64,000 bases of DNA from Octopus vulgaris. Its lineage: Eukaryota. The position numbers and the translations under genes were made by a program. A model generated the notes under the pieces. It was not told where the DNA came from. It made no database searches and saw only the letters and a list, made by a program, of their open reading frames with translations. This document shows positions 415 to 26,554 of the stretch, piece after piece. Every line of letters starts with the position of its first letter. Position 1 is the stretch's first letter. The stretch lies in contig OX597822.1 of assembly GCA_951406725.2 (NCBI GenBank), forward strand, positions 95,728,001-95,792,000, written 5' to 3'.

Positions 415-860
415 TATTTGTATGTTTGTGTTTGTACGTCTACCATCGCTTGACAACCGATGTTGGTGTGTTTTTGTCCCCATAACTTAGCATTACGGCC
501 TCCGTAACTTAGCAGTCTGGTAAAAGTTACTGATAGCATAAGTACTAGGTTTACAAATTATTAGTCTTGTGATGAATTTGTTCGTTTAAGGCGGTGCAGT
601 CAAATGACTGAAGCAATTAAAAAATATGATAAAAGAATACAAGAACATATATGTGTGTGTATCTGTGTTTGTTTGCCACCACTACTTGACATATGATCTT
701 GGTTTGTTTAGGCTCCTAACTTAGCAGTGCAGTAAAAGACAACCAATAGACTAAGTACCAGGCTTTGAAAACAAGTACTACTCTCAATTTATTCAGCTGA
801 ACACTTCAAGGCAGAGCTTCAGTATGGCCGCAGTCCTATAACTAAAACTAGGAAAAGATA
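415..860 (+). mobile_element. Two degraded 3' halves of SINE family B
   Basis: Two matches to the family B tail (cttgacaaccgatg..ggtgtgttt..taacttagc..aagtact..ggcggtgc..gcagtc..actgaa) at about 415-625 and 650-860. Confidence 0.6.
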
Positions 861-14744: not shown

Positions 14745-15266
14745 AGCTATAGTGGATTTATAGCAGTTTTGACTGCTATTTCAAGAAATGTATGGGGTTT
14801 TAAAACCCTCACCGTTTTAATTGCGATTTATTCACAATTATACTGTCTTCTTTCATGAAAATAAATTTAATTGCATGTTCTCACCACTGATGTGTTCGTA
14901 ATTAATTTTGAATTGTTTACGAAATATCCTCTGGAATGTGTTTTTGCGTTCCTCTTTTATTATTTAGTTTTCACTCATATCTAGTCTAGCCGTGGCTCGC
15001 TTTTCTGGTCTTTTCTTATAAATGCCTTCCTGACGAGAACAGTGGAACCATTTTAGTTCTTAACTTCGAAATTGCAATAGAGGACTACCCTTTTATTTTT
15101 ATTTGAATTTTGAATTTTATGTCATGTCGCTCGCCGACAGCTTTTAGATATAATATGAGTGGTTATAGTGGCCTTATAGCGGTTTTGACTGCTATTTCTA
15201 GAGATGTAAGCATTTTTACAACCCTCTCCGTTATCATTGTGATTTATTCATAGTTATACACTCTTC

Positions 15267-15270
<4 letters not shown>
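14745..15270 (+). mobile_element. Penelope-like unit: diverged ~110-bp direct repeats (14745-14855, 15160-15270) enclosing a hammerhead, ending at (TA)n
   Basis: Both repeats read tatagtgg..tatagc.gttttgactgctatttc..aaccctc.ccgtt..gatttattca..ttata..ctt; hammerhead between them. Confidence 0.55.
15026..15083 (+). ncRNA. Type I (minimal) hammerhead ribozyme
   Basis: cttc-CTGACGA-gaa..ttc-GAAA-ttgcaa-TA/gagg: intact core, G10.1-C11.1 pair, palindromic stem III attgcaat, AUA cleavage after 15079, 4-bp stem I including one G-U. Confidence 0.7.
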
Positions 15271-15346
<76 letters not shown>

Positions 15347-15349
<3 letters not shown>

Positions 15350-15680
15350 TGGCTCAGTGGTTAGAGCGTCGAGCTTACGATCGTGAGGTTGTGAGCTCGA
15401 ATCCCGGACGGGGCTGCGTGTTGTGTTCTTGAGCAAGGCACTTTATTTCACGTTGCTCCAGTTCACTCAGCTGTAGAAATGAGTTGCGACGTCACAGGTG
15501 CCAAGCTGTATCGGCCCTTGCCTTTCCCTTGGACAACATCGGTGACGTGGAGAGGGGAGGCCGGTATGCATGGGCGACTGCTGGTCTTCCATAAAACAAC
15601 CTTGCCCAGACTTGTGCCTCAGAGGGTATCTCTCTAGGTGCAAACCCATGGTCAGTGCCTGACCGATGGGGGTCTTTACT
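15347..15680 (+). mobile_element. CORE-type tRNA-SINE family D
   Basis: tRNA-like head tggctcagtgg..gctcgaatcccgg; CORE-like tgttcttgagcaaggcactttatttcacgttgctccagttcactcagctgtagaaatgag; starts directly after (TA)n. Confidence 0.9.
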
Positions 15681-15767
15681 ACTAATATAGGATGAAGATT
15701 TTTTACAGAAAGAAATTTCATCAGGAAATGTGGCAGCATATTAAAATACCTTAAGGTTAAAATAATA

Positions 15768-16142
15768 AACAACTTATAAATAAGGGCTAAAGAAAATTAT
15801 TTCTATGCCAATATGCTGATAACAGACTTTTAAATCGTCAATTTCCACATATTATTTACTCGCTACAGAAAACACGTAGAGCTGAAATCGAGGACAACTG
15901 GCCAACAGCTTTCTACTGAAGAGGAATAAATCTATTATGAGATTAATTCCGAAATTGATTCAATATAGAAATAACGAACTTTTTTTAAAAAAAGAAAAAA
16001 AAATTCTGTTTGCCAGCTTTCCTCGATTTCAGCTCTACGTATTTTCTGTAGCGAGTAAATAATATGTGGAAATTGACGATTTAAAAGTCTGCTATCAGCA
16101 TATTGGCATAGAAATAATTTTCTTTAGCCCTTATTTATCAGT

Positions 16143-16146
<4 letters not shown>
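15768..16146 (+). mobile_element. Fold-back unit: ~140-bp inverted arms (15768-15908, 16006-16146) around a hammerhead, ending at (TA)n
   Basis: Arms are near-perfect reverse complements (ataaataagggctaaagaaaattatttctatgcc.. / ..ggcatagaaataattttctttagcccttatttat). Confidence 0.8.
15910..15971 (+). ncRNA. Type I hammerhead ribozyme
   Basis: tttcta-CTGAAGA-ggaat(aaatctattatgagatta)attcc-GAAA-ttgattcaa-TA/tagaaa: all core nucleotides present, 6-bp stem I, stem II ggaat/attcc plus inner aatct/agatt, stem III attg/caat, cleavage after 15965. Confidence 0.85.
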
Positions 16147-16221
<75 letters not shown>

Positions 16222-16229
16222 GCATTTTT

Positions 16230-16418
16230 TTTGTTTGTGTTTGCAGCTCTTTACTCCGTCTGATAACAGGTTTGTTTATGTCTCCCTAAGGAGCCGATAG
16301 AATAAGTACCAGACTTATAAAAGGTGAGCTCCGGTGGAGTCGTTCGATTAAATATTCTCCAAGTCGGTGTCCCAGCATAGCCGCTGTCTAATGATTTAAA
16401 GTAAACGATAAAAGATGT
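16230..16418 (+). mobile_element. SINE family B 3' half, diverged
   Basis: gagccgatagaataagtacc..gtcgttcgatta..gtcccagcatagccgc..tgat. Confidence 0.6.
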
Positions 16419-25673: not shown

Positions 25674-25729
<56 letters not shown>

Positions 25730-26554
25730 GAAAAATTATATATAAGATACATTTTTATGCATCTTGAATTATGCTTGCACTGACGATTAAAAAGTGCATT
25801 TTGTGCGCTAATTATGAAATCATATAATATGCAGCTGAATTCTGTATTGAAAATGCTTGCTTCGAGAGTTGCATTCCCTCGAGTTCGGTACAATGTGTTT
25901 ATATATTATGGTAGTTTTGACTGTAAGAGACCCTGCAAGCGCGAGTCATTTATGTATAGTAATGCCCTTAATATAAATAAAAGAATATATATATATATAT
26001 ATATATATATCAGTGGCAACTCGGGCACTCGGGTTTAGCTCGAGTATAAATTTAATAAAGTGAGCGAGTATTTGCAAGTATGTTATTGCAGCCAATACCT
26101 CGGGCTCTTTTTATTGAGCCTGGTCGCAGTTCAGCGTCTGGTGGTCATCTTAAAGGTGCCCTGTGTCAAAAAATATTTGTAGCAGACATTCTCTCGACAT
26201 CATTCAAGCCCGCCCGACCCGGGCTCAGACGTTACAGCCCGAGTTGTTATCTATGATCGTAGAAATTAAAAGTAATTCAAATTCAAAGTTTTCTTGAAAC
26301 AATAAATTTCTGTAGAGATTAGGATTTAAATTCCAGTCTATGAAAATTTTCCGTTCTACAATATTCTTAAAGGAACGAAAAATTACCCAGCAACTCGGGC
26401 TAATACGAACGAGCTTGGTAGGTAGGTATAAAAAGACTAACTGGCATATCTTGTCAAGAGCACAGGCGAAAGTCAGATCGCTGATGTTTGTTGTTACTCC
26501 GCTGACGTTTTTGACTGCCGTTATTCTGTGTGTCTGTGTGTAAAGATCAGTGGT

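What the first reader, a model, noticed from the sequence alone, without database searches (positions are those of the whole stretch)
15768..16146. Hammerhead ribozyme with an intact core in the loop of a 140-bp fold-back ending at (TA)n
Seen: 15910-15971 folds into a complete type I hammerhead (stem I tttcta/tagaaa, CUGAAGA, stem II ggaat/attcc with an inner helix, GAAA, near-palindromic stem III, AUA cleavage after 15965). It sits between near-perfect 140-bp inverted arms in a ~380-bp unit with no coding remnant. Established: minimal type I hammerheads with palindromic stem III occur in Penelope-like element pLTRs and in non-coding retrozymes. Inference: this is a non-coding, self-cleaving mini-retroelement, and a transcript would place a ribozyme on top of a long dsRNA stem.
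Basis: partly seen in the sequence, partly recalled or inferred. Interest (0 to 1): 0.75.

Follow-up and report, generated by a model that had tools for sequence, protein, structure and literature searches.

The report
Hammerhead retrozyme copy, head-to-head insertion
The hammerhead ribozyme motif and the 144-bp inverted arms are real, but the fold-back is only one truncated, mirror-image double insertion of an abundant ~500-base non-coding repeat that inserts the way Penelope-like retrotransposons do, so it is an ordinary new example of a known kind of element.

Summary
Observation confirmed. A type I hammerhead (HHR) with a complete core lies at 15910-15971, with cleavage predicted after A15965. 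It sits between 144-nt arms that are 95% complementary, and the unit ends at (TA)n. My descriptor found this one motif in the window and none in 200 shuffles. A sister family keeps the core and changes all three stems by compensatory substitutions.

Interpretation partly supported. The 385-bp fold-back is not a mobile unit: nine fold-back loci each have a different arm/HHR junction. Most copies have no inverted arm. The family unit is about 505 nt, non-coding: a 272-nt internal part, the HHR, a linker and the 141-nt arm. Its insertions show 5' truncation, partial tandems (pLTR), an 81-84-nt tail, inverted 5' copies that always meet 5'-to-5', and 3' ends at (TA)n. These are the published hallmarks of Penelope-like element (PLE) insertion.

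The window holds an inverted copy (15677-15908, arm plus tail) and a forward copy (15910-16149) cut exactly at the HHR's 5' edge, which removes the family's distal stem I. PLEs with intact ORFs are abundant in the genome, but no partner was identified. The RNA data were uninformative.

The scan has reported this kind of element before on other DNA of this genome. It is a new member of a known kind (animal non-LTR retrozyme, a non-autonomous PLE derivative).

The parts
15677..15764 (-). Outer part of the inverted copy: the family's 84-nt 'tail' (start of the unit, M1-84) plus a short T/A-rich spacer
   Evidence: BLAST of the family reference on the window locus: the inverted match runs from the arm out to reference position 362. 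The same terminus (M81-84) recurs in 13 of 20 independent loci.
15765..15908 (-). Left arm: inverted, 5'-truncated copy of the family's 3' arm (M358-498)
   Evidence: Inverted repeat I1, 144 nt, 95%. It differs from the family arm consensus at 3 positions.
15910..15971 (+). Type I hammerhead motif: stem I 15910-15915/15966-15971; CUGAAGA 15916-15922; stem II 15923-15950; GAAA 15951-15954; stem III 15954-15964; cleavage after A15965
   Evidence: Sequence. Descriptor scan: 1 hit against 0 in 200 shuffles. Family model R1 scores it 96.4 bits. Cross-family pair counts.
15972..16005 (+). A/T-rich linker between the hammerhead and the arm
   Evidence: Sequence. Present in all family copies, with variable A/T runs.
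16006..16149 (+). Right arm: 3' arm of the forward copy, which is 5'-truncated at the HHR edge (M273) and ends without a tail at M~505
   Evidence: It differs from the arm consensus at 6 positions.
16145..16222 (.). (TA)n then (TGTA)n microsatellite abutting the 3' end: the presumed target
   Evidence: Sequence. 13 of 14 defined 3' ends in 20 other loci also abut (TA)n of 6 or more units.

Best explanation
The locus is an old, dead-end insertion of an abundant non-coding repeat that carries a hammerhead. The repeat's unit is about 505 nt: a 272-nt internal part, a 62-nt HHR, a linker and a 141-nt arm. It is a non-autonomous, retrozyme-like element copied into (TA)n microsatellites by Penelope-like (PLE) reverse transcriptase/GIY-YIG endonuclease.

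Shown: the window holds two 5'-truncated copies joined 5'-to-5'. One is an inverted copy (arm plus 84-nt tail, 15677-15908). The other is a forward copy (HHR, linker, arm, 15910-16149) ending at (TA)n. The 144-bp fold-back is simply the part the two copies share.

Inferred from the literature: in the family's life cycle the HHR cuts multimeric or read-through transcripts after H17. This gives unit-length RNA that a tRNA ligase can circularise and that serves as the reverse-transcription template.

Inferred for this copy: it has one HHR only. It lacks the distal stem I of the family ribozyme and has a weak 4-bp A/U-rich stem III. At most it would make a single, probably inefficient cut in a passing transcript, and it cannot release a unit or a circle.
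For: 1. Family. Whole-genome search gave 2046 first-look candidates. Most copies match only query 146-385, from the HHR to the arm end, at 90-92%. At least 150 HHR copies score 80 bits or more with model R1.

2. Retroelement anatomy. The first sample shows a series of 5' truncation points with shared 3' ends. In 20 loci chosen only for an intact HHR, the typical layout is: an optional inverted 5'-truncated copy, a partial upstream copy, the full unit, a tail of M1-81/84, then (TA)n. Nine of the 20 are head-to-head, and in all nine the copies meet 5'-to-5'. Thirteen of 14 defined 3' ends abut (TA)n.

3. Orientation. Among the top 150 HHR hits, close pairs are 5 divergent, 0 convergent and 3 tandem with 489-545 nt spacing.

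4. Published PLE insertion architecture is the same: 5' truncation, pLTR, an adjacent inverted 5'-truncated copy, a tail at one end, and a (TA)n preference (PMC8557442).

5. The junctions differ in all 9 fold-back loci.

6. The HHR is under selection in the lineage. A younger sister family (95-97% identity) keeps the core and changes the stems. On the model-fitted alignment 92.8% of cells are paired, and 15 of 20 pairs have changes on both sides. None of 500 shuffles reaches these values, and slid registers give 31-49% paired.

7. Possible enzyme source. The genome gave 6136 GIY-YIG candidates, many with an open 781-aa frame. [quoted passage not shown] Two such PLE copies also end at (TA)n.

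8. Animal non-LTR retrozymes have been argued to be non-autonomous PLE derivatives (10.64898/2026.07.22.740005).
Against: - No autonomous partner was identified. The family 3' end has no significant similarity to the 30 sampled PLE loci or to the 3' end of the 781-aa PLE (score equal to shuffles).
- No Rfam hammerhead hit.
- The catalytic fold is not the MFE.
- There is no evidence of transcription, cleavage or circles. The only RNA-labelled runs are contigs of uncertain library type, laid at 90% likeness on a repeat.
- The covariation rests essentially on two families, so few independent events, and on an alignment fitted to the model.
Confidence: 0.85

Rival explanations
1. The same family, but the template is a circular (or multimeric) HHR-processed RNA. 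Reverse transcription is primed by microhomology between the (TA)n target and one of two UA-rich sites of the RNA, running round the circle more than once. This is the retrozyme rolling-circle model. It would explain the partial upstream copy, the full unit and the tail without any special endonuclease resolution.
For: There are two sharply defined classes of 3' end. Both lie at UA-rich sites (M81-84 and M498-505) and both abut (TA)n. Insertions longer than one unit are common, as pLTR piece plus full unit plus tail. Direct dimers occur at 489-545 nt spacing. Metazoan retrozymes are reported as circRNAs (PMC7229834).
Against: No circle or junction read was seen. Coding PLEs show the same pLTR and tail architecture without known circles (PMC8557442). 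Inverted 5' copies are not explained by a circle alone.
Confidence: 0.3
2. The 385-bp unit is a fold-back/MITE-type DNA transposon with 144-bp terminal inverted repeats and TA target sites, and it merely carries a hammerhead-like loop.
For: Long, near-perfect terminal inverted arms and a TA-rich 3' flank. About 8 other loci match the whole 385 nt at 79-89%.
Against: The junctions between arm and loop differ at every fold-back locus. The inverted copy runs 88 nt beyond the 'TIR' on one side only. Most family copies have no inverted arm. The 5'-truncation series with common 3' ends is a retroelement signature. No target-site duplication is visible.
Confidence: 0.03
3. The hammerhead resemblance is a chance or decayed motif with no catalytic meaning. 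The family is just an AT-rich repeat.
For: No Rfam hit even at E<=10. A/U-rich stems. The catalytic fold is 3.5 kcal/mol above the MFE. PLE-type minimal HHRs cleave poorly in vitro (PMC4209133).
Against: 0 of 200 shuffles give such a motif. The 11 core nucleotides, H17 and the G10.1-C11.1 pair are kept between two families whose stems differ by compensatory changes.
Confidence: 0.07
4. This particular locus has been co-opted. Its transcript forms a 144-bp dsRNA capped by a ribozyme, and it acts as a source of small RNAs or as an RNA-editing or sensor substrate.
For: The predicted fold of 15765-16149 is one long hairpin (-227 kcal/mol) with HHR stems I and II formed in the loop.
Against: The arms show only private, uncompensated substitutions, at the level expected for any two copies. 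The arrangement is a common insertion by-product, seen in 9 of 20 loci. There is no transcription evidence.
Confidence: 0.05

Closest known systems
Animal non-LTR retrozymes (Cervera & de la Pena 2020, PMC7229834; Li et al. 2026 preprint 10.64898/2026.07.22.740005)
   Same: Non-coding, AT-rich repeats a few hundred nt long, each unit carrying one type I HHR. They occur as dimers or partial tandems and are linked to PLEs.
   Different: The unit is larger (~505 nt against the reported 170-400 nt). Copies are mostly dispersed insertions of 0.5-1.6 units rather than long arrays. The window copy has a single HHR. CircRNA was not shown here. Neither paper I searched reports a cephalopod example.
Penelope-like element insertions and their pLTR hammerheads (Cervera & de la Pena 2014, PMC4209133; Craig et al. 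2021, PMC8557442)
   Same: 5' truncation, partial tandem (pLTR), an adjacent inverted 5'-truncated copy, a tail at one end, a (TA)n target, an HHR with a long helix II and a short near-palindromic helix III, and a conserved G10.1-C11.1 pair.
   Different: No RT/EN ORF. The tail is 81-84 nt rather than 30-40 bp. Helix III has 4 bp and a loop, so it is more canonical than the loop-less min-HHR. [quoted passage not shown] No sequence is shared with the sampled PLEs.
Schistosoma Sm-alpha / newt satellite 2 type I hammerhead repeats
   Same: High-copy non-coding repeats with a type I HHR whose weak helix III suggests that it acts as a dimer.
   Different: Unrelated sequence. Sm-alpha is SINE-like with a Pol III head, and no such head is seen in this family.
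MITEs / fold-back DNA transposons
   Same: Long inverted arms around a short loop, and a TA-rich flank.
   Different: Junctions are variable, the extension is one-sided, and there is no TSD. Most relatives lack the second arm.

Membership tests
Hammerhead ribozyme, type I | Conserved core C3 U4 G5 A6 N7 G8 A9 ... G12 A13 A14, the A15.1-U16.1 pair, and H17 that is not G | tested here: met
   CUGAAGA at 15916-15922, GAAA at 15951-15954, A15954-U15964, A15965
Hammerhead ribozyme, type I | Three helices round the core, with the open end in helix I | tested here: met
   Stems of 6, 5+5 and 4 bp. Cross-family pairing is 92.8%, with 15 of 20 pairs covarying
Hammerhead ribozyme, type I | Match to the Rfam hammerhead covariance models at gathering score | tested here: not met
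   No hit at gathering score nor at E<=10 on 15700-16200. The long interrupted helix II is the likely reason (inference)
Hammerhead ribozyme, type I | Site-specific self-cleavage | not testable with these tools
   Needs transcription and cleavage assays. The contigs laid cannot show RNA ends
Hammerhead ribozyme, type I | Helix I / helix II tertiary contacts for activity at low Mg | tested here: inconclusive
   The family consensus has an extended stem I with a 2x2 internal loop. The window copy lacks the distal helix because of 5' truncation. Contacts cannot be scored
PLE-type insertion (non-autonomous) | Variable 5' truncation with common 3' ends | tested here: met
PLE-type insertion (non-autonomous) | Partial tandem (pLTR) and a tail that repeats the unit's start | tested here: met
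   A pLTR piece, the full unit and an M1-81/84 tail occur together in L090, L092, L095, L096 and others. In the window the tail is at 15677-15764
PLE-type insertion (non-autonomous) | Adjacent inverted 5'-truncated copy, joined 5'-to-5' | tested here: met
   9 of 20 loci, all 5'-to-5'. 5 divergent against 0 convergent pairs. Window 15677-15908 against 15910-16149
PLE-type insertion (non-autonomous) | Microsatellite (TA)n target | tested here: met
   13 of 14 defined 3' ends abut (TA)n. In the window it starts at about 16145
PLE-type insertion (non-autonomous) | Sequence shared with an autonomous PLE (pLTR or 3' end) | tested here: not met
   No significant similarity to 30 PLE loci. Only 30 of more than 6000 candidates were sampled, so this is weak. 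There is one possible chimera, L053
Animal non-LTR retrozyme | Tandem units, each with an HHR, so that double cleavage releases a monomer | tested here: inconclusive
   The family has direct dimers at 489-545 nt. The window copy has one HHR only
Animal non-LTR retrozyme | Expression as linear and circular unit-length RNA | tested here: inconclusive
   Contigs from runs only guessed to be RNA. No junctions or ends were seen
MITE / fold-back transposon | Fixed terminal inverted repeats and TSDs shared by the copies | tested here: not met

The most novel reading that the evidence does not exclude
With thousands of short copies, this family could show how Penelope-type insertions get their pLTR and 'tail'. 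All defined 3' ends fall at just two UA-rich sites (M81-84 and M498-505) that abut (TA)n. This fits reverse transcription primed by TA microhomology on a circular or multimeric ribozyme-processed RNA and running past one unit. If so, pLTR plus tail would be a read-round product rather than an endonuclease artefact.
Probability: 0.2. Interest if true: 0.5.

Novelty: new member of a known kind. Interest (0 to 1): 0.25.

Why it matters
The finding adds a well-delimited family of hammerhead-bearing, PLE-type non-autonomous elements, with a sister family, in what earlier scan notes take to be an octopod genome. The papers I searched report no such elements from cephalopods.

It also warns annotators. 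Long, perfect-looking fold-backs next to (TA)n in such genomes are often head-to-head retroelement insertions, not MITEs or hairpin RNA genes.

The family's two sharp classes of 3' end offer material for studying the poorly understood PLE integration mechanism. For the locus itself nothing unusual remains.

Tried and rejected
- Rfam search of the whole window at gathering score, and of 15700-16200 at E<=10. No hammerhead family was reported; the miRNA and sRNA hits are artefacts of the long hairpin.
- Unconstrained MFE folding. It does not give stem III, either for the monomer or for a cofolded dimer.
- Public runs. All usable RNA-labelled runs are Logan contigs of guessed type. At 90% likeness they mix copies, and the upstream SINE swamps them, so they gave no ends, joints or circles.
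- Search for the autonomous partner by similarity to 30 GIY-YIG loci, and by local alignment of 3' ends against shuffles. Nothing significant.
The anatomy statistics therefore rest on 20 + 24 loci.
- MAFFT alignment of the two families' HHRs misplaced one column. I used a model-fitted alignment instead, which leans towards the structure.
- ARAGORN on the neighbouring SINE head found no tRNA.
- The MITE reading, the chance-motif reading and the co-opted-hairpin reading were each considered and rated low (see the rival explanations).

Full report
**1. What is there**

The window is G000:C9:95728001-95792000 of a 2.8-Gb genome in 227 contigs. Earlier scan notes call it an octopod; I did not verify that.

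The sequence of 15600-16320 and the repeat finder confirm two arms, 15765-15908 and 16006-16149. They are 144 nt long, 95% complementary and 97 nt apart. A (TA)n-(TGTA)n microsatellite follows from about 16145.

The 97-nt loop starts with a 62-nt type I hammerhead motif:
- stem I: 15910-15915 with 15966-15971, 6 bp
- core CUGAAGA: 15916-15922
- stem II: 15923-15950, two 5-bp helices separated by an A.A mismatch, closed by a 6-nt loop
- GAAA: 15951-15954
- stem III: 15954-15964, 4 bp, 3-nt loop, near-palindromic
- H17: A15965.

All core positions, the A15.1-U16.1 pair and the G10.1-C11.1 pair are present.

**2. Is it more than chance?**

I wrote a descriptor requiring the core, stems of at least 5, 4 and 4 bp, and an H17 other than G. 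It found this one motif in the 64-kb window on both strands. It found none in 200 dinucleotide-preserving shuffles.

Three results argue for caution:
- Rfam reports no hammerhead, either at gathering score or at E<=10 on 15700-16200.
- The catalytic fold costs -8.6 kcal/mol against an MFE of -12.1 kcal/mol, and the MFE replaces stem III with another pairing.
- Such weak, near-palindromic helices III are typical of metazoan and PLE hammerheads. These are thought to act as dimers and cleave poorly in vitro (PMC4209133).

**3. The family**

A search of the whole genome with the 385-nt unit gave 2046 first-look candidates. Most scored copies match only positions 146-385, from the first base of the hammerhead to the end of the right arm, at 90-92% identity. 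About eight loci match the whole fold-back at 79-89%.

Mapping the loci on a reference copy (L016) gave a unit of about 505 nt, which I call M:
- M1-272: internal part
- M273-334: hammerhead
- an A/T-rich linker
- M358-498: arm.

I then took 20 further loci chosen only because they hold a high-scoring hammerhead. The typical insertion reads, in order: an optional inverted 5'-truncated copy, a partial upstream copy of variable length, the full unit, a tail that repeats M1-81/84, then (TA)n.
- Nine of the 20 have an inverted partner, and in all nine the copies meet 5'-to-5'.
- Thirteen of 14 defined 3' ends abut (TA)n of six or more units.
- The 3' ends fall into two classes: M81-84 (with tail) and M498-505 (no tail).

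Among the 150 best hammerhead hits in the genome, close pairs are 5 divergent, 0 convergent and 3 tandem, the last at 489-545 nt spacing.

This is point for point the insertion architecture published for Penelope-like elements. It includes 5' truncation, partial tandems forming pLTRs, and an inverted 5'-truncated copy next to the 5' end. It also includes a tail, often at one end only, and a preference for (TA)n (PMC8557442).

**4. The window copy in these terms**

- Inverted copy: 15677-15908. This is the arm M358-498, a spacer and the 84-nt tail M1-84, all on the minus strand.
- One base, 15909.
- Forward copy: 15910-16149 or so, M273-505, with no tail, followed by (TA)n.

So the fold-back is the overlap of two 5'-truncated copies. 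The outer end of the inverted copy abuts a very high-copy SINE (15347-15676) rather than (TA)n. A (TA)n tract lies just upstream of that SINE.

**5. Is the fold-back a unit?**

No. In the nine fold-back loci both break-points differ at every locus. The inverted arm ends anywhere from inside the arm to inside the linker. The forward copy starts from 0 to about 35 nt upstream of the hammerhead.

The two window arms differ from the family arm consensus at 3 and 6 positions. Only one of these is shared, and none is compensated. Their 95% complementarity is what any two copies of this family would show.

**6. Is the hammerhead meaningful?**

A sister family turned up next to a PLE locus (L037). It is younger, at 95-97% identity among copies, with 2767 first-look candidates. 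It has the same layout: a related internal part, hammerhead, arm, tail and (TA)n. Its hammerhead keeps the whole core, H17, G10.1-C11.1 and even the A.A/A.A internal loop of stem II. It differs in stems I, II and III by compensatory changes.

I built a covariance model from main-family copies and aligned 57 matches. Counted on that alignment:
- 92.8% of cells are paired
- 15 of 20 pairs have changes on both sides
- none of 500 shuffles reaches these values
- slid registers give 31-49% paired.

Two caveats apply. The alignment is fitted to the model, and the signal comes from essentially two lineages.

The family consensus also has a longer stem I: 6 bp, a 2x2 internal loop and a distal helix of 4-5 bp. 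This appears in its MFE. The window copy is cut exactly at M273 and has lost that distal helix, so it is a minimal version of the family ribozyme.

**7. Who moves it?**

The genome gave 6136 first-look GIY-YIG candidates, many lying in open frames of 781 aa. [quoted passage not shown] Two copies of this PLE end at (TA)n.

Other PLE loci carry their own hammerheads with a long helix II and a loop-less palindromic helix III (L034).

I found no sequence shared between the family and the 30 sampled PLE loci, so the partner is not identified. One 5'-truncated PLE fragment (L053) carries a suggestive stretch at its 5' junction, right after (TA)n. It is 55 nt long and 85% identical to the family segment that ends inside the hammerhead. 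This could be a template-switch chimera, but it is a single case.

**8. Expression**

The run search found DNA runs and several small runs only guessed to be RNA, all kept as contigs. Laid at 90% likeness, they cover parts of the element. They cannot show ends, strand or circles, and the neighbouring SINE dominates them. Nothing can be concluded about transcription.

**9. Mechanism, with its status**

- Shown: the family anatomy, the head-to-head origin of the fold-back, the (TA)n association, and conservation of the hammerhead fold between families.
- Inferred from the literature: PLE RT/EN acts in trans by target-primed reverse transcription. The hammerhead cuts multimeric transcripts to unit length. 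A tRNA ligase circularises the product (PMC7229834; 10.64898/2026.07.22.740005).
- Inferred for this locus: any read-through transcript would fold into the 144-bp hairpin (-227 kcal/mol), with hammerhead stems I and II formed in the loop. A single, probably slow cut after A15965 is possible. No unit or circle can be released, because there is only one ribozyme.

**10. Comparison and novelty**

The element works like, and by the tested features belongs with, animal non-LTR retrozymes, also described as non-autonomous PLE derivatives. It differs from the published examples in four ways:
- its unit size (~505 nt)
- its dispersed 0.5-1.6-unit insertions
- its long tail (81-84 nt)
- its more canonical helix III.

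Rfam membership by score is not met. Sharing of sequence with an autonomous PLE is not met in a small sample.

Earlier notes of this scan describe several similar families elsewhere in this genome. These include a ~494-nt one with the same 'start copied at the end' feature and a head-to-head 535-nt one. I could not tell whether any of them is this family.

Verdict: a sound observation, an over-read interpretation, a new member of a known kind, and low interest.

Noticed in passing
window 14800-15346: Another non-coding, terminally redundant unit. 14810-14858 recurs at 15228-15275, a period of about 418 nt. It has a hammerhead-like motif at 15024-15085 (R1 20 bits, E 0.2; loop-less palindromic helix III AUUGCAAU) and ends in (TA)n at 15270-15346. 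Probably a copy of a different retrozyme-like family.
   Followed up: partly
window 25690-26010: A ~260-nt element between two (TA)n tracts, with a degenerate hammerhead-like motif at 25774-25835 (R1 26.4 bits, E 0.0065). The core CUGACGA is present but the 10.1/11.1 pair is broken.
   Followed up: partly
window 15347-15676: A very high-copy SINE with a tRNA-like head, though ARAGORN calls no tRNA. It lies between a (TA)n tract and the tail end of the inverted copy, and its depth in public runs is orders of magnitude above that of the retrozyme part.
   Followed up: partly
L037:2826-3264 and L056-L075: A younger sister family (95-97% identity, 2767 first-look candidates) with the same architecture and a covarying hammerhead. 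In L037 it forms a head-to-head pair inserted in the (TA)n at the 3' end of a PLE with an intact ORF.
   Followed up: partly
L053 (G000:C4:100775322-100778582, minus strand), locus rc 1259-1312: A 5'-truncated PLE endonuclease fragment. Directly after (TA)n it begins with 55 nt that are 85% identical to the retrozyme family segment ending inside the hammerhead. This may be a template-switch chimera between a PLE RNA and the retrozyme RNA. It is a single case.
   Followed up: partly
L076:34-945: A 303-aa Lys/Glu-rich ORF with no Pfam match, overlapping the start of the 765-aa PLE ORF in another frame. It may be an upstream ORF of this PLE family.
   Followed up: no
L034:127-212 (-) and 451-536 (+): An inverted pair of long-helix-II hammerheads with a loop-less palindromic helix III (ACGAUCGU), downstream of a PLE GIY-YIG domain. 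This is the classical PLE min-HHR type, unlike the motif in the window.
   Followed up: no
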